The notes beneath the pieces are model-generated. The model was given only the letters and a program-made list of their open reading frames with translations. It was not told the origin of the DNA and did no database searches. A stretch of 64,000 bases of DNA. It comes from Diadema antillarum (lineage: Eukaryota). The position numbers and the translations under genes are program-made. Numbering within the stretch: position 1 is the first letter of the stretch; each line of letters starts with the position of its first letter. The DNA lies in contig NW_027270992.1 of the NCBI RefSeq assembly GCF_040938485.1, positions 5,890,001-5,954,000 on the forward strand, written 5' to 3'. Of this stretch, positions 7,141 through 64,000 are shown in pieces.

Positions 7141-7530
7141 TTAAAGGGATAGTACAGTATTGGTGGAGATGAGAATTGGGCTTCTAACTTTTTGCAAGAT
7201 ACCAAGAAAACACTTATGATATAGTACAGAGCATACCATTTTAAGAGGAATTCAAAGTTTATTTTATTAAAATTGGGTTTGGAATAACTGAAACATACAA
7301 AAACAAAGTAAAACAAAGCGATCGTAGTAAAGTGTGGGTCCCTCACTTTATTATAATCACTCTTTTTTGGATATCTCAGCCATTTCAAAACCAATTTTCA
7401 TCAAAGAAACATTGAATACCTCATAGAACTACATGCTCTTTATTATTTCATAAGAGGTTTCTCATTATCTCACCAAAAAATGTTAGAAACCTGAAATTAG
7501 GTCTCAACCAAAACTGTACCATCCCTTTAA
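7141..7530. mobile_element. Kolobok/T2-like MITE (TTAA-AGGG termini), subfamily A
   Basis: TTAA|AGGGATAGTACAGTATTGG ... CCAAAACTGTACCATCCCT|TTAA; about 25-bp imperfect TIR; close copy at 47912. Confidence 0.85.
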
Positions 7531-28464: not shown

Positions 28465-29287
28465 TTTGTTGTGTCATAGTGCTGAAATGTTCCCCCCAAA
28501 AGAGTTCAGCAAAGTTTTCAAGCCACAAACTGTTGTACCACCACCATCCACCCCCCCCCCCCCCCGAAAAAAATAACAATAATAATAATGATTTCAAAGA
28601 AGTCTTGTCATTCTTGGTTGCTCGTTCATGCTCAAAAGACTGTAAGTCAACGGCTGATCACTTCCATTCATAACGTTTCCTGATTTGTGGCATGTTTGCC
28701 ATGCCGTGACCTTCACCGTGGCTTTGACTGTAATCAGAAACAGGAATGACCCTAGCTCTCCCAGCAGAACTCGAAGAGGGTGAAAAGGGCATGATGGAGC
28801 AATGTTAAACAAGAATGTGCACTTTTGGGTGTTTTGAGGAAATGCTGTTTGGTAAAGAAATCACTGTACTCTTGGAAGTAGAGACATGGTATAACAACAA
28901 AGAGAAATAACAAGGAGATGATTGACAGCACCAATAAGCCTCAAACCACAAAGAGAACCCCCAAATCGCTTGAATTTAGGGTCTACACAAAGACGAGGGT
29001 TCATCAAACATTTTTGACAGAAACAAAAATCAAATTGATATTCATTCCTCATACATTTCTTGAAAGGAGCTTACGTATTACTGTCACCTACAAAATCAAG
29101 GTTTAGGCCGATTTGGATAATTCACTGTCATACTCATAGAAAATAGAAATTCTTTTCTAAGGGCCTCATAATTTTGAAGGACTAATCGGAGATTGGGTTG
29201 GTATAATAGCACTATGACAGGTTTCAACTTTGTGAGATACCTACAGCTCTTGTTAACTTATGGGATATTAAAAGACTCAAGCATGAC

Positions 29288-29663
29288 NNNNNNNNNNNNN
29301 NNNNNNNNNNNNNNNNNNNNNNNNNNNNNNNNNNNNNNNNNNNNNNNNNNNNNNNNNNNNNNNNNNNNNNNNNNNNNNNNNNNNNNNNNNNNNNNNNNNN
29401 NNNNNNNNNNNNNNNNNNNNNNNNNNNNNNNNNNNNNNNNNNNNNNNNNNNNNNNNNNNNNNNNNNNNNNNNNNNNNNNNNNNNNNNNNNNNNNNNNNNN
29501 NNNNNNNNNNNNNNNNNNNNNNNNNNNNNNNNNNNNNNNNNNNNNNNNNNNNNNNNNNNNNNNNNNNNNNNNNNNNNNNNNNNNNNNNNNNNNNNNNNNN
29601 NNNNNNNNNNNNNNNNNNNNNNNNNNNNNNNNNNNNNNNNNNNNNNNNNNNNNNNNNNNNNNN
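29288..29663. other. Assembly gap (N run)
   Basis: Ns in the sequence. Confidence 1.
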
Positions 29664-29947
29664 ATACGGGAAGGGAAGTGGGGTAGAGAGAGTAAGCAGA
29701 GACACTATGCTGGAACATAACGATCTGATTTTGTGTACCGCGTCTGTCACCACATGGGTACTTTTCTCATTGGGGGGAGGGGAAGGGGGGAGGAGGGGAA
29801 TGAAATATGGGGGCATAGGGGAGAGGGTATGCAGGGTATTTCAGTATTTCATCCATTGTTGACCTCTGCCATTGATAGCCAGTCAGCCTTCTGCCTAGCC
29901 CAAAATCATATCCACCATCAAACCTCAGTGTATATTTTTTTCCACAG

Positions 29948-56646: not shown

Positions 56647-57010
56647 CACTGATCGTCCGAGACCAATGGTATGAAAACACACCTTTTGTCCGAGGACAAA
56701 ATCTACGTCCGAGGACGTAACATGCTGTCCTCGGAAGGAATAGACGTGCAAAATGATATTCTACGTCCGAGGACGCATCTGACCCGATATTCGGCTTGTC
56801 CTCGGACGTTCGAAAAGTATGAAGTTGACACACATAACACTCCCGTCGATGCAGCAACGTGTGTGAAAGAAAAAGTTAAGAGCGCCCCCTGTGAACACAC
56901 AGATCCTGGCGATCGCGCACGCGATTAAGCAGTGCTGCAGCTAGCTAGCGCTAGGGCGCTAGCGCGCGCTTCGCTAGCGATCAGCGATAGCGCTAGCGTG
57001 TAGCGCGCGG
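56647..57010 (+). mobile_element. Putative left end of a large DNA element carrying the SET gene
   Basis: Sharp compositional change after a (GT)n tract. It starts CACTGATCGTCCGAG, has 5-6 copies of GTCC(GA/TC)GGAC in both orientations within 160 bp, then a CpG/GCTAGC-rich promoter-like block. No matching right end is seen in the window. Confidence 0.5.
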
Positions 57011-57120
57011 TAGTACGGTATACTGTAGGTGAAGTATGAGCAGCATGCACCGTATGGATCCGGATCGTAATGTGTGAAAAGAGGTTATTGAGCTCGCCTT
57101 CGAGGACCGCTTTGTCAACG

Positions 57121-57129
57121 ATGTCAATG
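57121..57129 (+). CDS. Putative start-codon mini-exon (MSM) of the SET gene
   Basis: aacgATGtcaATG|gtaaga: ATG with A at -3, then a strong phase-0 donor at 57130 matching the phase-0 acceptor at 58280. An upstream in-frame ATG at 57070 is an alternative start. Confidence 0.4.
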
Positions 57130-60100
57130 GTAAGAAAACTAGCGGTACCGTCCGCAGATCTATTCATTCTTTTATGTTTTAATGTCAAGTTTAAGATCAT
57201 AGTCATGGTGACAGAAACCACGATAATGTTGGTGTCCACTTGTTCCTTTGCACTCACGCACCTGTGTACAACATGAATGAAGCCTGAGGCTGAGGCTGAA
57301 GCTGTGAACGCCTGCTGCTAGTCTAAAATGTAATGGACGACGAACGACGTTACCAGCAGTTCACAAAGGAGACTCGATCCACTGCTTCGAAAATAATTAA
57401 TTTAAAATTGTGGGTATTAGTCAATGGAAAAGGGGTGATGATAATCACGTAATTTACGGGTAACTCAGGGAGTCATTGGCATTGGTATGCTGAGCTGTGC
57501 AAATTTAAGTGACATGCGGCCCTCTATATTTGGAGATAGAAATCACCAAGATAATCAGCAAATTCTTGGAACATATATATAATTTTTTGGCATGTACACC
57601 TGTAATGATAAAATATCCTATATCCTATTTTCAGTCCATACCTTCAATTGGATCTAAATTACCATGATCAAGTGAATTTTTAACAATATTTTTCTGATCA
57701 CTGCTCTTGTTCCTCTATATTGGAATTCATATAGAACGTCTAGATCTAGAGAACGCTACTTTTCTATTGTGAGCAATTTGCACTATGCTAGACCTGAGTG
57801 CTAGGTTATCTGATGATAACCTGGCATGAGTGTTAGTGTGCTACAGTGCTTGTGGCACAGCTCTGTAGACTGGAGTTAGACTAGGCCTACAGTACAGTCT
57901 GTTTTTACACTTATGATATAAAGACTATAGGCTAGATCAGGGGAAAAATACAGGAGGGTAAAGGCGATTTGCCCCAAAATGTGAAAAATAGCCCTTGTAA
58001 GTTGCAAAAGAGCCCCCATAAATTGCTATTAGATTCAATAGAGAATTTAATTTGGAATGAACAGAGGTAGGAAAAAATAGCCCCTCGTACAGAAAAAAGA
58101 GGGTTTTTTTCCCCTGGATTAGATATGAATAGATATTTATTAAAGATATGTTTATGTTTTAGATTCTAGAGAAAAAGTGAAAAGAAAAGAAAAGAAAAGA
58201 AATGAAATGATATATTACTTTACATATAAGTATGCAACTGGATGTTCATGTACAGCATTTCATAATCCCCTATTGACAGAGTATTCCAGGACGAAAAAAG
58301 CGGCGTGTCCGCATCTCACCCAGTCTTATGGCGGAGCATTGGTGTAAGCTGGGAAAAGATCAAGAAGGTTTCAGGAAGGTTTTTCTCAACGACAACATAG
58401 GTACACGTAGATTATTTCTTTGTAGTTTAAGGAGTGGTACGTAGTATTGAACTGGTCAATGAAGAGGTTTCAAATTTTACTGTTTCCCTGCCAACCTGTA
58501 CCATATATGAAACACTATGTGCTACTTGTGCCAAGGGCTACTTAAGGAGGGTAATCTTTCTCTGTGTAGACCCACAGGGGATCATCCTTTGTGGGGGGGG
58601 GGGGGGGATGTTGAATGTCAAGCAATCTGCACGTTTATGCCTGAGGTGCATGTATTAGACTGTCCAGGTGACCTACTTTTTGCTATCTAAACAAAGTGCA
58701 ATTGCACTCATTCACCGACATTGTTCGGGGGGGGGGGGGGGGATGTACATTGGGTTTGTGGGACTTTGCATTCCTAACTCCTCTGGGATGAATTAACAAC
58801 AACAACAAAGATTACTGTACTAAAAAAGCACTTTTACTTTATGTTTTGTATAAGGCCTCTTGTCTTCCCCTAATAAAAAGGTTACAAAAAGAGCTAGAAA
58901 TTGACAGATAAGATAGTATATATGTACGTGTATCAAAAGGCTTATCTTGCAAGAAAGCATCATACATGTAAGTCCCTGTATTTATTTAGAAATCTCAGTG
59001 GAGTCAATGACAACATTATCCACTGGAGTTGGCTAAGTCTTTAGATATGGTAAAGTTCTGATGTTATCACAGTATGAATGGTCTCAAGAGAGGTTTCAAA
59101 TTTTACTGTTTCCCTGGCAACCAGTACCATATGTGAAACACTTTATATGCTACTTGTTAGAAACCGGAATGGTATAAATAAATTTGTAAAGGATGAATCA
59201 CTAAGGACTGTCCAGGGAGGCAGAAATTTCTCCTTGCCAAGGGCAGCGGGCTGTACAAGCGAGGCAAATGATAATGACCACATAACGATTTAATACATGC
59301 AAGGCCATACACAGAATTTTTTTTTTTTTTTTGGGGGGGGGAGCAAAACACATACAAACTTTGAAAACCTGAAAACGAGGGAGCGAAGTGACTGAGCTGG
59401 TCACAAGGGTGCTTTTGCATTTTTAACAGTGAAATTTGGTGCACACTTTTGATGGATTGTCTGAAAATTTTCAGTAGAAACAAATGTCAGTTTTCAAAAT
59501 TTCTGGGGGCAACACCCACCCCCCACCTCATTTCTGTGTATGGCCATGATTGCTTGAAACAGTATTGTTGAAAACTTTGTTTGCCATAAGTTTTATAAAA
59601 ATATAAATGTGTTTTAAATGTAGTTTTCCTTCTCCATTTCTAGGACATGGACTTGTGACCACAAGACCATTTCTTAAGGGAGATTTCCTGCTTGAATATC
59701 GTGGAGCTCTGTCCATTGCTAATGACGAAGATGAAGAGAATGTGGATTACATTTTCCATTTTTCTCACAGAAATACGGAGTATCGGTCAGTAATTTGAAA
59801 TAGTATATTGACTCTTATATGTTCAGTGTATGCTGGTTGATATTTGCATGCTGTAAAATTTATTATTTTAGTGTTTTGGATAGGTCAATTCTCAACAGAG
59901 CAAATAAATGCAATCCGTTAGCTACCTACCCAAAACAAGAAGAGCAAAATCCCCCCCCCCCATCACCAATCTGAAAGGGAAGATTTGATGCCATGAAATA
60001 GTTTACTAATTTATTTTACTAATTTAATTGCACTGTAAACAGATTTTCACTAGTTCATGGATAAATGTTAAGCACCTTATCAAAAGTCAGAGCCCATTTG

Positions 60101-62814
60101 GAACATGTTTTGTTAGTGTCTCTCCTGCACAGCGTCTTGCTCAAGCTCCCAAAGCTCTATGGACAGACAATAGGGGATCGGGAAAGCCGATGTAAGTAAA
60201 AGAAGAAGACGATTAAAGACGCAAGACGAGACTTTTGATAAGGTTCCTGATTCAGACATACAGACTGTGTTTCCTAAAGTGCTATGATTACTCGAAATAT
60301 GGATATGAAGAATTATTCTTTATTCCCTTTATTTTGATGTGTATTGTCTGTCATATGGTACAAAGCTAACGAATGTCCTGTTTGTTTAAATGTTGTTGTT
60401 TTTTAGGCCTCTGTAGATGAAGTCTTGAGGGAGCATTAAAACATTGCACCTTTTTATCCTTCTGTCCATCTGTCCTTCCGTCTCCAAATTGGGTTTCCAT
60501 GGGATATCGGTCTGATTTCAATAATTGTTGGTTTGGGGGAGACGAAACTAACATACAAAGGTCACACTTCATTATATTTACAAATTGGTCAAATGTGGTT
60601 TTCCATCCACAAAACTGATTAAATGATTGATGGATATTAGTATTTTTTGGTACATGTATATCACTTGTTGTTTTATAATGACCCCCCCCCCCACGAAGTC
60701 TGGAGAGTGAATTAACTTTTGCACCTGTTAGTCCGTCCATCCCCCAAATTGGTTTCCACCCGATAACTTGAAAAATATTGGACAGATTTGAATAATTTTT
60801 GTTGTGTAGGTACATCACACTAAAATACAGGTCGTTTGAATTTGGAGTCGGCAGGTCGCAACTCATTCTTTATGCGCATTGGTTTCCACACAATAAATTG
60901 ACAAATCTTGGACAGATTTAAGTAATTTTTGGTTTGTAAAATATCACACTGAAATACAGGTCAAGTTCGAATTCAAAGTTGGCAGGTCAAAGGTCACAGG
61001 TCATAATATATGCAAATTTGTTTCCATGCAATAACTTGAAAAATATTGGGCAGATTTAAGTAATTTGGAGTATAGGTAGAGCACACTAAAACAGGTCAAT
61101 TTCTAAATTCAGAGTTTGCAGGTCAGAGGTCTGAGGCCAGAGGTCACAGTCCTATATATGCAAATTGATCAACATTTTTGATGAACTTTTTCACACCAAA
61201 GAACTAAGAAATGCTTACTAATCACATTAACTTGGGCATCCGTGTCCTATGGACACAGCACAGCTTTTCTAGTTAATTTTTCATTTTAGTGCAGTGATTT
61301 ACCATTTGGGACAGATAGGGGAGTTGAAAACTTCCAGTACTGTATATAAAGTTCCTGTTCTGGGTATGTTCACTCTCTCCAGGATTGATGCATCAGATAG
61401 CAATTCTTGCCTGGCAAGGTGGGTCAACGATGAACACATCCGTCCAAATAGCATCATGAAAAAGGTCACATTTGATGATAGCTTCCCCCATCTGTGCCTG
61501 TTTGCTTTGGTGGACCTTAAAGAAGGTGTTGAACTGACATACGACTATGGAGTAGAGAATTTACCGTGGCGACAGGTAAGTGAATATATATGTTTTTGTT
61601 GCTTATTCTAGTGTATGCACTTGTTAAAAGGTGGACCTTAAATGTGAAAAACTTGCTTATAAAGTAACCTAACATTAGTAGACCTTTGACATTCAAGGTA
61701 ATTCCATTGTAAAAAAAAAAAAACCCTGCTGAACTTACGTAATACAGGTGGTCCTTACAGTGTGTAAATGACTAAACTTAGCTATAAAAAAAAGGATCTC
61801 ACTTTGATAGACAGGTCCACATTTCAGAATAAACCCTCAGAAAACGTCCTTTAGGAATATTCTGTTAAGTGGTAATTTATCAATTGTTTCAAAAAATTCC
61901 AGGGTGCTTAATGAAAAAAAAATTGTTTGCCAAACTTGATTCTCAAGTCTTCCTCCCCAATTGTTCCACCCCCCCCCCCCCCAAAAAAAAAAAACACAAA
62001 ATGGCGACAATTTTCTGCATAAATAAAACAGTGGAGAATTAAAAAGCGAGAGGAAGAGAAATAAGCAACTCAGCAATATAATGCCCTCAATCGTACAAGT
62101 ATTTTAGGAGAGAAATAATAAATTCTGACCAGTTTGATATTTAAGAATATGACCGTCTTATTTGTGCAACTATGAAACTATCAAGACAATAATGAAATGT
62201 TTTATGCCTTTTCCCATGATTGCAGTCCACTCTGGCCAAGGACACCCCAGTAAATAGAGGAAACAGCAGAAAAGATGCTCATGAAGAATCTGTGGTAAGT
62301 AATACCTGCAAAGGGTTTCTTTAGGGATCCTCAATGAATATGCTGATAGCTCAGCTATGATATATCCTCGTTTGAATATGATAATAATTTCTGTGTCAAA
62401 TTTGCAGTGTTATGTCCTCATACATTTATTGAAACAAGTTCATTGTTGTATTTGCAGTGTAATATTCTCACACATTTTTGCAAACAAGTTGATGTGTTCT
62501 GTAGTGTATCAGGGGGAGGGGGATGTCTATACCATTGCCAGCACACTGCACCAAAAATGCTAGTAGAGAGAAAGAAAAAGAAGAGAAAAGAAGAGAAATT
62601 AGCATAGGAAGCAATGTAGTGCTCCTCATTCTTATATATAAACAATTTCTTCGATGAATTTGCTGTTGTAATGTCCTCATATAGTTCTGTATTTCATTGA
62701 TGAAATGTTTTATGTCTTTTTCTTATGAATTGCAGTCCACTCTGGCCAAGGACACCCCAGTAAATGGAGGAAACAGCAAAAAAAGATGATCATGAAGATA
62801 TGGAAGAATCTGTG
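57121..62814 (+). CDS. Spliced gene (5' part) encoding a PR-Set7/SETD8(KMT5A)-like SET-domain lysine methyltransferase, probably transposon-associated; likely continues past the window end
   Basis: Hand-spliced exons 57121-57129, 58280-58400, 59644-59785 and 61383-61575 join in phases 0/1/2 with GT-AG boundaries. They give MSMSIPGRKKRRVRISPSLMAEHWCKLGKDQEGFRKVFLNDNIGHGLVTTRPFLKGDFLLEYRGALSIANDEDEENVDYIFHFSHRNTEYRIDASDSNSCLARWVNDEHIRPNSIMKKVTFDDSFPHLCLFALVDLKEGVELTYDYGVENLPWRQ. This matches SET8-family motifs (GxG, GDFxxEYxG, xDA, RxxN, PHLxLxA, ELxYDYG, PW). Confidence 0.85.
57938..58116. mobile_element. hAT-like MITE in SET gene intron 1
   Basis: ggctagat|CAGGGGAAAAA ... TTTTTCCCCTG|gattagat; 11-bp TIR and an imperfect (6/8) 8-bp TSD. 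Confidence 0.55.
58280..58400 (+). CDS. SET gene exon: basic NLS-like RKKRRVR and pre-SET segment
   Basis: ttgacag|AGT...ATA G|gtacac. The 121 nt are open (SIPGRKKRRVRISPSLMAEHWCKLGKDQEGFRKVFLNDNI). The last G joins the next exon to form I-G-H-G. Confidence 0.75.
58453..59157 (+). repeat. ~78-bp direct repeat pair in a SET gene intron (58453-58529 and 59079-59157)
   Basis: Shared AGAGGTTTCAAATTTTACTGTTTCCCTG.CAACC.GTACCATAT.TGAAACACT...GCTACTTGT. Confidence 0.8.
59644..59785 (+). CDS. SET gene exon: N-terminal half of SET domain
   Basis: ttttccttctccatttctag|GACATGG...TATCG|gtcagt; encodes GHGLVTTRPFLKGDFLLEYRG...DYIFHF (core of ORF 59607..59798). Confidence 0.9.
60399..60670 (+). mobile_element. 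Older 5' fragment of a related HINE-like element directly upstream of the 60671 copy
   Basis: Parallel head: ttttttaggcc...gaagtct...ttgcacct...ctgtccatctgtcc...caaattgggtttcc. Confidence 0.45.
60671..61274 (+). mobile_element. Helentron-associated interspersed element (HINE; Tsp/CvA/DINE-1-type architecture) in a SET gene intron
   Basis: T-rich 5' end with ATGACCCC, a GTCC microsatellite seed, three ~135-bp core repeats (60751, 60881, 61020), 3' GGGCAT, a GTGTCC-TAT-GGACAC hairpin and a CTAGTT end. Confidence 0.65.
61383..61575 (+). CDS. SET gene exon: C-terminal half of SET domain
   Basis: cactctctccag|GATTGAT...CGACAG|gtaagt; encodes IDAS...RWVNDEH...PHLCLFA...ELTYDYG...LPWRQ (core of ORF 61294..61611). 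Confidence 0.92.
62226..62294 (+). CDS. SET gene downstream phase-0 mini-exon (STLAKDTPVNRGNSRKDAHEESV)
   Basis: ccttttcccatgattgcag|TCC...GTG|gtaagt; 69 nt, open, symmetric phase 0, compatible with the preceding exon. Confidence 0.6.
62736..62814 (+). CDS. Duplicate mini-exon with an apparent +1 frameshift in an A7 run
   Basis: A near-identical copy of 62226-62294 with the same splice sites. It is 79 nt long; removing one A restores STLAKDTPVNGGNSKKDDHEDMEESV. Confidence 0.45.
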
Positions 62815-64000
62815 GTAAGTAATACCTGCAAAGGATTTCTATAGGGATCCTCAATAAATATGCTGATAGCTCAGCTATGGTATGTCCTCGTTTGAATATG
62901 ATATCTATTTCTGTGTCAAATTTGCAGTGTTATGTCCTCTTACATTTATTGGAACAAGTTCATTGTTGTATTTGCAGTGTAATATTCTCACACATTTTTG
63001 CAAACAAGTTGTGTGTTCTTTAGTGTATCAGGGGAGGGGCATGTCTATACCATTGCCAGCACACTGCACCAAAAGTGCAATGGAGAGAAAGAAAAAGAAG
63101 AGAAATTAGCATAGGGAGCAACGTAATGTCCTCATTCATAAATGTAAACAATTTCTGTGTAAAATTTGCAGTGTAATGTCCTCATACATTTATTGAAACA
63201 AGTTCAATGTTGCATTTGCAGTGTAATATTCTCACTCATTTATTTCTCTCCGAAACTACTTTGTTCTTTAGAGTCAATGGGAGGGGGAGAGGGGGAGGGG
63301 GGAGGGGGAGGGAGAAGGGGTATGTCTACACCCTTGCCAGCACACTGCACCAATAATGCAGTAGAGAGAAGAAAAAGAAGAGAAAAGAAGAGAAATTAGC
63401 ATAGGGAGCAATGTTGTGTCCTCGTTCATATATGTAAACAATTTCTGTGTCAAATTTGCAGACCTGTGTAATGTCCTCATACATCTATTGAAATAAGTTC
63501 AATGTTGCATTTGCAGTGTGTAATATTCTCACTCATTTATGCAAACAAGTGCTGTGTTCTTTAGTGTATAGGGGAGGGGGAGGGGGTATGTCTACACCCT
63601 TGCCAGCCAGCACTGCTTCAAAAATGCAGGAGAGAGAAAGAAAAAGAAGAGAAAAGAAGAGAAATTAGCATAGGAAGCAATGTAATGTCCTCATTCATAT
63701 ATATAAACAATTTCTGTGGAGTGTAATATCCTCATACATTTATTGAAACAAGTTCAATGTTGCATTTGCAGTGTAATAATCTCACATATTTATGCAAACA
63801 AGTGCTGTGTTCTGAAGTGTATCGCGGTGGGGGGGGGGGGGGGGGGAGGGGGAGGGGCTTGTCTACACCATTGCCAGCACACTGCACCAAAAATGCAATA
63901 GAGAAAAGAAAAAGAAGAGATATTAGCATAGGAAGCAATATAATGTCCTCATTCACTATATGTAAACAATTTCTGTGTCAAAATTTGCAGTTTTTATGTC

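What the first reader, a model, noticed from the sequence alone, without database searches (positions are those of the whole stretch)
56647..64000. Intact SET8-like histone methyltransferase gene just inside a transposon-like left end
Seen: three phase-matched exons give a complete, stop-free PR-Set7/SETD8-like SET domain with an N-terminal RKKRRVR, starting about 470 bp inside a structured terminus. Established: SETD8/PR-Set7 monomethylates H4K20, and an ELxYDY motif with Tyr at the F/Y switch predicts monomethylation. Inference: this is not the host Set8 orthologue (tiny N-terminus, variant active-site motif, repetitive linker exons). It looks like cargo of a large spliced DNA element. From memory, and not verifiable here, SET8-like domains occur fused upstream of a tyrosine recombinase in Crypton-type elements of fish and marine invertebrates. 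A mobile element writing its own chromatin mark would be the most interesting system in this window.
Basis: partly seen in the sequence, partly recalled or inferred. Interest (0 to 1): 0.8.

Follow-up and report, generated by a model that had tools for sequence, protein, structure and literature searches.

The report
Left end of giant SET-recombinase transposon
The last 7.4 kb of this sea-urchin window are the left end of a very large jumping gene whose own gene starts with a SET8-like histone-methyltransferase domain; in the complete purple-urchin relative that domain is followed by a tyrosine recombinase, a combination I could not find described in print.

Summary
Exons 58280-58400, 59644-59785 and 61383-61575 each match SET/KMT5A on their own, and polyA RNA-seq shows the predicted GT..AG junctions plus two repeated mini-exons.

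This is not the host Set8. Two Strongylocentrotus purpuratus loci on different chromosomes share the same exons, introns, mini-exon array and left terminus. All three flanks are unrelated dinucleotide microsatellites.

One purple-urchin copy is complete at 44.2 kb. It runs: left end, SET exons, an array of about 18 kb of mini-exons, one 1.9-kb exon for zinc fingers plus a tyrosine recombinase (fold matches XerH/XerD/Cre), and an imperfectly inverted right end. The other copy is a 24.9-kb deletion derivative without the recombinase.

The SET exons are under purifying selection (dN/dS 0.16). The odd N-D-E-H motif is the family norm.

Two things remain open. The window stops inside the array, so this copy's recombinase is unseen. 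As assembled, mini-exon 6 carries an in-frame stop, giving a SET-only product of about 193-195 aa.

The scan found a SET-recombinase element on other DNA of this genome before (s1-224545). This is a second, unrelated-in-DNA family.

The parts
56573..56636 (.). (GT)32 microsatellite directly flanking the element. It is the presumed insertion target and is not part of the element.
   Evidence: TRF. Similarity to both S. purpuratus copies stops here. Their flanks are a CA-rich stretch and a (GA)n repeat.
56637..56666 (+). Left terminus, GCGTATACATCACTGATCGTCCGAGACCAA. It forms an imperfect inverted repeat with the right end of the S. purpuratus element.
   Evidence: Alignments A3 and A4. The same start is found at L001:7594 and L002:9552.
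56637..56915 (+). Conserved left subterminal block. It is 82% identical to S. purpuratus, which is more conserved than synonymous sites.
56686..56811 (.). Array of five GTCC-GA-GGAC palindromic sites in both orientations, up to 16 bp long (TACGTCC-GA-GGACGTA). A sixth, degenerate site lies in the terminus itself. They are candidate binding sites for the element's own protein and/or promoter elements.
   Evidence: The positions are conserved in L001 and L002.
56840..57129 (+). Exon 1: 5'UTR plus ATG TCA ATG (57121-57129) and donor gt at 57130. The transcript start is not mapped. An RNA contig reaches to about 56822.
   Evidence: X1 contig 56840-58401 runs 18 nt over the stretch's start. Two X9 reads join 57129 to 58280.
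58280..58400 (+). Exon 2: basic patch RKKRRVR and the start of the SET pre-domain.
   Evidence: Junction 58400/59644 in RNA. It is 52-60% identical to urchin SET-recombinase proteins.
59644..59785 (+). Exon 3: N-terminal half of the SET domain (GHGLVTT...EYRG).
61383..61575 (+). Exon 4: C-terminal half of the SET domain (RWVNDEH..PN, ELTYDYG).
   Evidence: It is 87.5% identical to S. purpuratus P0003, P0151 and P0205.
61576..61893 (+). First 320 nt of intron 4, 82% identical to S. purpuratus. Its role is unknown.
62226..62294 (+). Mini-exon 5 (23 codons, STLAKDTPVN...), phase 0.
   Evidence: RNA junctions 61575/62226 and 62294/62736.
62736..62814 (+). Mini-exon 6. It is a repeat of exon 5, is 79 nt long, and has an in-frame TGA at 62787-62789 after an A7 run.
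62187..64000 (+). Tandem array: two units of about 510 bp with a mini-exon, then units of about 269 bp. It runs off the window. It is homologous to the mini-exon array of about 18 kb in the S. purpuratus element.

Best explanation
Window 56637-64000 is the first 7.4 kb of one copy of a giant cut-and-rejoin DNA transposon of the tyrosine-recombinase (Crypton-like) kind. In the complete S. purpuratus relative, SET exons and recombinase exons lie in one orientation in one element; an older gene model joins them into a single protein. Shown:
- the exons, their splicing and low expression;
- a left end shared with two S. purpuratus copies that have unrelated microsatellite flanks;
- in the complete 44.2-kb S. 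purpuratus copy, the order left end, SET exons, mini-exon array, zinc-finger plus tyrosine-recombinase exon, acidic tail exons, inverted right end;
- purifying selection on the SET exons.

Inferred:
- The recombinase excises the element as a circle and reinserts it, preferentially at dinucleotide microsatellites.
- The conserved GTCC-GA-GGAC palindromes near the ends are where the element's own DNA-binding parts (zinc fingers or C-terminal domain) dock, and they may also serve as its promoter.
- The SET domain methylates a histone lysine (H4K20 by analogy) on donor or target nucleosomes, or tethers the recombinase to the H4 tail.
- The mini-exon array gives a flexible linker of variable length. 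It may allow SET-only and SET-recombinase products by splicing.

As assembled, this copy makes only a SET-only protein of about 193-195 aa. Whether it keeps a recombinase lies outside the window.
For: - Exons and the SET/KMT5A match.
- RNA junctions.
- Sharp common left boundary in three copies, with (GT)n, CA-rich and (GA)n flanks.
- The two S. purpuratus copies are 96-97% identical and lie on different chromosomes.
- L002 and L006 overlap on one contig and carry SET exons, then the array, then the P0211 recombinase gene. P0205 joins them.
- Shared right end at L001:32469 and L006:22484, with a (GT)n flank, and TIR-like ends.
- Recombinase fold: the AF2 model's top ~40 Foldseek hits are nearly all tyrosine recombinases (XerH, XerA, XerD, integrases, Cre) or the related type IB topoisomerases. 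P0205 is 46% identical to the folded part. R, K, R-K-H, G-H and Y motifs align.
- dN/dS is 0.16.
- N-D-[DE]-H-x-x-P-N and E-[IL]-x-Y-D-Y-G are nearly invariant in 164 aligned relatives.
- No DDE transposase was found in any ORF tested from the complete copy.
Against: - The recombinase exon of this copy is not in the window, and I could not fetch the DNA beyond 64000.
- Mini-exon 6 has an in-frame stop.
- One S. purpuratus copy (L001) has lost the recombinase, so YR-less derivatives exist.
- No second D. antillarum copy and no empty site were seen, so mobility in this genome is inferred from S. purpuratus.
- Current RefSeq models the S. purpuratus SET part and recombinase part as two genes. The joined model P0205 is an older prediction.
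- Pfam does not recognise the recombinase, and a PDB sequence profile search found nothing. The assignment rests on the fold and the motifs.
- Methyltransferase activity and its substrate were not tested.
Confidence: 0.8

Rival explanations
1. This copy is a decayed or internally deleted, non-autonomous member of the same family. It keeps the left end and an expressed SET-only gene but no recombinase, like S. purpuratus L001.
For: - In-frame TGA in mini-exon 6.
- L001 is a 24.9-kb derivative that lacks residues 162-803 of P0205.
- RefSeq models in S. purpuratus are SET-only, at 198 and 194 aa.
Against: - The stop follows an A7 homopolymer and could be an assembly error or an allele. Read depth there is too low to tell.
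- The SET exons are intact and the left end is well preserved.
- The window simply ends before the place where the recombinase would be.
Confidence: 0.35
2. It is a domesticated host gene: a SET-only protein co-opted from such an element and now kept by the urchin for its own chromatin regulation.
For: - It is expressed and correctly spliced.
- dN/dS is 0.16 between Diadema and Strongylocentrotus.
- Noncoding parts are conserved more than synonymous sites.
Against: - Similarity to S. purpuratus begins exactly at the transposon end and the flanks are unrelated.
- In S. purpuratus the same unit is present at least twice at 96-97% identity on different chromosomes, once with its recombinase and both ends.
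- Purifying selection is equally expected for an active transposon lineage.
Confidence: 0.08
3. It is cargo of a DDE transposon that carries SET (HarbingerS or MuDR-like), or of a CACTA/EnSpm element, as the CACTG and the subterminal repeats suggested.
For: - SET genes are known in HarbingerS and in oomycete MuDR families (PMC12730594, citing Repbase Reports 2014).
- CACTG at 56647 plus subterminal repeats resemble EnSpm.
Against: - CACTG is not conserved and is not the boundary.
- No ORF tested from the complete S. purpuratus copy matches any transposase family in Pfam; the one long ORF is the recombinase exon.
Confidence: 0.02
4. It is the host KMT5A/PR-Set7 orthologue or an ordinary paralogue.
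For: - The nearest solved structures are KMT5A.
- NCBI names the S. purpuratus relatives PR-Set7-like.
Against: - About a third of residues are identical to human KMT5A in exon 4 (counted by eye from the alignment), against 50-88% to SET-recombinase family members from urchins to fish.
- The family-specific N-D-[DE]-H motif is present.
- The N-terminus is tiny.
- It is embedded in a repeated unit with defined ends.
Confidence: 0.02

Closest known systems
Crypton DNA transposons (tyrosine-recombinase elements; Kojima and Jurka 2011, PMC3212892)
   Same: - A DNA element with a tyrosine recombinase as the only recombination enzyme.
- No reverse transcriptase and no DDE transposase belong to the element.
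- Copies have shared ends and unrelated flanks.
   Different: - It is 25-44 kb instead of a few kb.
- The gene is split by many introns.
- The gene begins with a SET8-like domain and contains a tandem mini-exon array.
- The ends form an imperfect inverted repeat with palindromic subterminal sites.
- Neither Pfam DUF3504 nor the Pfam Phage_integrase gathering score is reached.
- No SET is mentioned in the Crypton paper.
SET-recombinase element found earlier in this genome (s1-224545), probably the L005/P0173 locus, and its Lytechinus pictus relative P0166
   Same: - The same protein plan: SET8-like domain, linker repeats, zinc fingers, tyrosine recombinase, C-terminal domain.
- A giant intron-rich element next to a dinucleotide repeat.
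   Different: - No DNA similarity to the window.
- SET exons 2 and 3 are only 52-53% identical to P0173; P0173 lacks an exon-4 match, and exon 4 is 65% identical to its L. pictus relative P0166.
- No GTCC-GA-GGAC sites.
- The linker lies inside one big exon rather than in an array of mini-exons.
HarbingerS and Phytophthora MuDR families (transposons encoding a SET histone methyltransferase; Repbase Reports 2014, cited in PMC12730594)
   Same: A DNA transposon that carries a SET-domain lysine methyltransferase, presumably to act on chromatin.
   Different: Those use DDE transposases and SET is a separate gene. Here the enzyme is a tyrosine recombinase and SET appears fused to it.
KMT5A / SETD8 / PR-Set7 (H4K20 monomethyltransferase)
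   Same: - It is the closest solved SET domain (E about 2e-11 for the S. purpuratus homologue, against 1e-5 for the next family).
- The ELxYDYG motif has Tyr at the F/Y-switch position.
   Different: - The N-H pair is split as N-D-[DE]-H.
- There is no long regulatory N-terminus.
- It is part of a mobile element.
- The substrate is unknown.
SETMAR (SET fused to a mariner transposase in primates)
   Same: A SET domain and a transposition enzyme in one protein.
   Different: SETMAR is a single domesticated host gene formed by exon capture of a DDE transposase. Here the fusion is the element's own gene and is spread over many animal phyla.

Membership tests
SET-domain lysine methyltransferase, SET8/KMT5A-like | SET domain recognised by profile | tested here: met
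   Pfam PF00856 on exon 4 scores 26 bits (cut-off 22.4). Exon 3 scores 18.5 bits on its own. The S. purpuratus homologues give E 6e-13.
SET-domain lysine methyltransferase, SET8/KMT5A-like | Closest solved relatives are KMT5A/SETD8 | tested here: met
   KMT5A chains fill the top 12 to 14 ranks.
SET-domain lysine methyltransferase, SET8/KMT5A-like | Canonical adjacent N-H (RxxNHS) cofactor motif | tested here: not met
   The window has RWVNDEH. HMMER aligns N and H with two residues inserted between them. N-D-[DE]-H is nearly invariant in the family, so this is a conserved variant rather than decay.
SET-domain lysine methyltransferase, SET8/KMT5A-like | C-terminal ELxYDY motif with the catalytic Tyr | tested here: met
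   ELTYDYG is in exon 4. The family consensus is E-[IL]-x-Y-D-Y-G.
SET-domain lysine methyltransferase, SET8/KMT5A-like | Monomethylates H4K20 | not testable with these tools
   This needs an enzyme assay.
Host KMT5A orthologue | Single-copy syntenic gene with a long regulatory N-terminus | tested here: not met
   The N-terminus before SET is about 40 aa. S. purpuratus has at least two 96-97% identical copies on different chromosomes. The flanks do not align.
Crypton-type (tyrosine-recombinase) DNA transposon | Encodes a tyrosine recombinase | not testable with these tools
   For the window copy, the place where it would lie is beyond base 64000. For the same family in S. purpuratus the feature is met, through P0211 and P0205, the fold hits to XerH/XerA/XerD/Cre, and the aligned motifs.
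Crypton-type (tyrosine-recombinase) DNA transposon | Several copies with the same ends and unrelated flanks | tested here: met
   The left end is shared by the window, L001 and L002. The right end is shared by L001 and L006. Only one copy was seen in D. antillarum itself.
Crypton-type (tyrosine-recombinase) DNA transposon | No reverse transcriptase or DDE transposase of its own | tested here: met
   Nine representative ORFs of at least 110 aa from the complete S. purpuratus copy gave no Pfam hit. The remaining ORFs are repeats of the mini-exon array and were not scanned. In L001 an ORF resembling, by eye only, the C-terminal end of a non-LTR element's protein sits at 20909-21352 and looks like a nested insertion. 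No profile search was run on it.
Crypton-type (tyrosine-recombinase) DNA transposon | No terminal inverted repeats and no target duplication | tested here: inconclusive
   The ends form an imperfect inverted repeat of about 25 nt. The flanks are microsatellites, so a short duplication or crossover core cannot be read.
HarbingerS / PIF-Harbinger | DDE transposase (DDE_Tnp_4) and a 3-bp target duplication | tested here: not met
   No such ORF is present in the complete copy.
EnSpm/CACTA | Conserved CACTA/CACTG termini | tested here: not met
   CACTG lies 10 nt inside the end and reads TATCG in S. purpuratus.

The most novel reading that the evidence does not exclude
A widespread but undescribed class of giant animal transposons encodes one protein that both recombines DNA (tyrosine recombinase) and methylates histone H4K20 or a similar lysine (SET8-like domain). 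The element thereby sets the chromatin state of its own donor or target site. It homes to dinucleotide microsatellites, tunes the SET-to-recombinase linker through a tandem mini-exon array, and has moved horizontally between sea-urchin orders.
Probability: 0.25. Interest if true: 0.85.

Novelty: new variant of a known kind. Interest (0 to 1): 0.66.

Why it matters
Transposons that carry their own chromatin writer are rare, and the known cases (HarbingerS, oomycete MuDR) use DDE transposases with SET as a separate gene. Here a SET8-like domain appears to be built into a tyrosine recombinase in elements of 25-44 kb. Relatives occur in urchins, brittle stars, crinoids, sea cucumbers, cnidarians, molluscs and fish.

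If the SET domain is active, recombination and histone marking are coupled in one protein. That would be a direct handle on how a mobile element chooses or prepares chromatin.

There are practical consequences too:
- Genome annotations currently name these genes PR-Set7-like or KMT5A-like, and split the element into separate genes.
- The strong nucleotide conservation between distant urchin orders raises the question of horizontal transfer.

Tried and rejected
- Reaching the DNA beyond 64000. Exact-product look-ups of two ORF translations around exon 4 found nothing. Three word searches returned no D. antillarum protein from this locus.
- Searching the findings index by sequence with the terminus and with exon 4. 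Both came back blank.
- Sequence profile of the recombinase part against PDB. No hit. Pfam Phage_integrase was weak, in only 2 of 9 members. Fold search settled the question.
- Looking for the recombinase in L001 with tblastn, phmmer and two HMMs. It is absent, and this was later explained as an internal deletion.
- P0007, the next-closest SET. Its contig could not be read.
- The other SET-recombinase loci, L003, L004 and L005. None shares the window's terminal motifs or any DNA.
- CACTA/EnSpm and HarbingerS readings. Both were rejected.
- Literature. Five searches and two papers gave no description of a SET-tyrosine-recombinase element. Repbase itself could not be searched.
- S. purpuratus database proteins served as whole-protein proxies.

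Full report
**What is in the sequence**

- An ATG at 57127 (a second one in frame at 57121) is followed by a gt donor.
- Exon 2 (58280-58400) encodes SIPGRKKRRVR...
- Exon 3 (59644-59785) and exon 4 (61383-61575) complete a SET domain. The phases match and there is no stop.

- Pfam SET matches exon 3 (E 0.0027) and exon 4 (E 1.3e-5, above the curated cut-off).
- The best solved structures for both exons are KMT5A/SETD8 chains.
- The whole S. purpuratus homologue P0003 hits KMT5A at E about 2e-11, while the next family (ASH1L) reaches only 1e-5.

**RNA evidence**

I laid three polyA RNA-seq runs of the same species, and one contig set that behaves like RNA, on 56840-62835.
- Junctions 58400/59644, 59785/61383, 61575/62226 and 62294/62736 are seen, all GT..AG.
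- The exon 1 to exon 2 junction (57129/58280) is seen in two reads of an allele with six extra bases near 57112.
- Depth in the raw-read runs is about 1, so expression is low.
- In the contig run the exons stand at depth about 100 and most introns at 2-20. One unspliced contig covers about 56822-58401 at depth 62, so intron 1 is often retained or the first exon is long.
- Two repeated mini-exons follow the SET domain: 62226-62294 and 62736-62814. The second is 79 nt long and has an in-frame TGA at 62787-62789 directly after a run of seven A.
- As assembled, the product is therefore a SET-only protein of about 193-195 residues. Read depth there is too low to say whether the run length is real.

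**It is not the host Set8**

An exhaustive search with exon 4 found 927 relatives, 102 of them at E below 1e-10.
- In most longer hits the match starts near residue 90, as it would in the window's model, so the tiny basic N-terminus is a family trait.
- Long members of about 850-1300 aa share a common C-terminal body.
N, D, [D/E], H, then x-x-P-N-C are nearly invariant in 164 aligned relatives, as is E-[IL]-x-Y-D-Y-G.

**The C-terminal body is a tyrosine recombinase**

- Pfam sees it only weakly (Phage_integrase in 2 of 9, best E 2e-5).
- A sequence profile finds nothing in PDB.
- An AlphaFold model of that part (pTM 0.66) gives, in the top ~40 Foldseek hits, almost only tyrosine recombinases (XerH, XerA, XerD, integrases, Cre) and type IB topoisomerases.
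- The alignment shows the expected R, K, R-K-H, G-H and Y positions.

**The element and its ends**

The nearest relatives of the window's exons are two S. purpuratus RefSeq proteins named PR-Set7-like, on different chromosomes: P0003 at L001 and P0151 at L002.
- The window aligns to both loci at the DNA level, and not only in the exons.
  - The left block 56637-56915 is 82-83% identical.
  - The first 320 nt of intron 4 are 82% identical.
  - Other intron pieces and the tandem array also align.
- Similarity starts sharply at window 56637, which corresponds to L001:7594 and L002:9552. Nothing upstream aligns.
- The three left flanks are (GT)32, a CA-rich stretch and (GA)n.
- The two S. purpuratus copies are 96-97% identical to each other from that point on.
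- Six GTCC-GA-GGAC-type palindromes, up to TACGTCC-GA-GGACGTA, lie within the first 175 nt. The 12-mer ACGTCCGAGGAC occurs 3 times in the window against 0.02 expected by chance, and the positions are kept in S. purpuratus.

**The complete relative**

A search with the Lytechinus protein's SET part brought up P0205, an older S. purpuratus model of 884 aa.
- Its SET part is 95-98% identical to the L001 and L002 exons.
- It continues into zinc fingers, the recombinase and an acidic tail.
- A member of its cluster, P0211, lies on the same contig as L002. Its locus L006 overlaps L002.

On that chromosome the order is therefore:
1. left end;
2. SET exons;
3. an array of about 18 kb with at least 20 copies of a 12-residue mini-exon;
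4. one 1.9-kb exon for zinc fingers plus recombinase;
5. small tail exons.

L001 and L006 stop being alike at L001:32469 and L006:22484. That point follows ...GGTCCTCGGACATAATAGGCGTGTATGTATGTG and is followed by a (GT)n repeat in L006. This right end is an imperfect inverted copy of the left end.
- The complete element is 44,234 bp.
- L001 is a 24,876-bp derivative that lacks P0205 residues 162-803. This explains why no recombinase could be found in it.
- Nine representative long ORFs from the complete copy matched no transposase or any other Pfam family.

**Selection**

Between the window and L001, exons 3 and 4 give pN 0.084, pS 0.40 and dN/dS 0.16 (68 synonymous sites). The left end and the start of intron 4 are more conserved than synonymous sites, which argues for cis-acting roles.

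**What this means for the window**

The window holds the left end and the SET part of a copy of this family, and it ends inside the mini-exon array. By homology the recombinase exon, if kept, lies some 10-30 kb beyond base 64000. I could not fetch that DNA.
- The copy may be complete.
- It may be an internal-deletion derivative like L001.
- It may be inactivated by the exon 6 stop.

**Mechanism (inferred)**

- The recombinase excises and reinserts the element, with a preference for dinucleotide microsatellites.
- The palindromic sites near both ends are the likely docking sites for the protein's zinc-finger or C-terminal parts, and they sit just upstream of where transcripts seem to begin.
- The conserved SET domain either methylates a histone lysine at the donor or target site or tethers the enzyme to the H4 tail.
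- The mini-exon array makes a linker of variable length and could allow SET-only products.

**Comparison with what is known**

- Cryptons are small intron-poor tyrosine-recombinase transposons. The reference paper mentions no SET domain.
- SET genes are known in HarbingerS and in oomycete MuDR transposons.
- Five literature searches found no SET-tyrosine-recombinase element. Repbase could not be searched.
- The scan found such an element before on other DNA of this genome (s1-224545). That one is probably the L005/P0173 locus, which has no DNA similarity to the window and no GTCC-GA-GGAC sites. The present element is therefore a second family.

**Organism**

Earlier notes name the organism as Diadema antillarum. 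In agreement, a 390-bp repeat of the window is 92% identical to one on a D. antillarum contig.

The joined spliced protein was never searched or folded.

Noticed in passing
window 56637-56915 and 61576-61893 against L001 and L002; also L005 against L003: Noncoding parts of two different SET-recombinase families are 79-88% identical between Diadema and camarodont urchins (S. purpuratus, L. pictus). From memory, these orders split over 200 million years ago. dS of the SET exons is only about 0.56. Either there is strong constraint on noncoding parts or the elements moved horizontally between urchin lineages.
   Followed up: partly
L002 22000-36736 and L006 1-9300 (S. purpuratus); window 62187-64000: A tandem array of units of about 450 bp each carries a short in-frame mini-exon (PSLEKEKNIPSS in S. 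purpuratus, STLAKDTPVN... in Diadema). These are spliced in series between SET and recombinase. Copy number differs greatly between copies.
   Followed up: partly
S. purpuratus AAGJ06000015.1, about 24,158,418-24,202,651 (L002 and L006): Current RefSeq splits one 44-kb element into two genes, a PR-Set7-like protein of 194 aa and an uncharacterized protein of 681 aa. An older model (XP_011677358.1) joined them. Many KMT5A-like or PR-Set7-like names in animal genomes probably belong to such elements.
   Followed up: partly
window 7141-7530, 23507-23899, 42583-42976, 47906-48302: An interspersed repeat of about 390 bp occurs in both orientations. Copies are 74-95% alike within the window. It is also present twice on the D. 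antillarum contig L005 at up to 92% identity. It looks like a MITE-type element.
   Followed up: no
window 56930-57015: A dense cluster of GCTAGCGC-type palindromes sits in the CpG-rich first exon/5'UTR. It is not conserved in S. purpuratus.
   Followed up: no
window 57111-57113: There is indel variation just upstream of the start codon. RNA reads carry 6 extra bases and the contig run X1 carries 14 extra bases.
   Followed up: no
window 60871-61131 (intron 3): A 138-bp unit is repeated about twice at 78% identity. An ORF of 166 aa on the minus strand across 60366-60866 has no support.
   Followed up: no
L001 29205-30912: Part of intron 2 and the start of SET exon 3 are duplicated in inverted orientation inside the S. 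purpuratus deletion derivative. The ORF at L001 20909-21352 looked to me, by eye only, like the tail of a non-LTR retrotransposon protein.
   Followed up: no
window about 21,000-21,300 and 29,250-29,700: These are runs of N (assembly gaps or masked stretches). I left them untouched.
   Followed up: no
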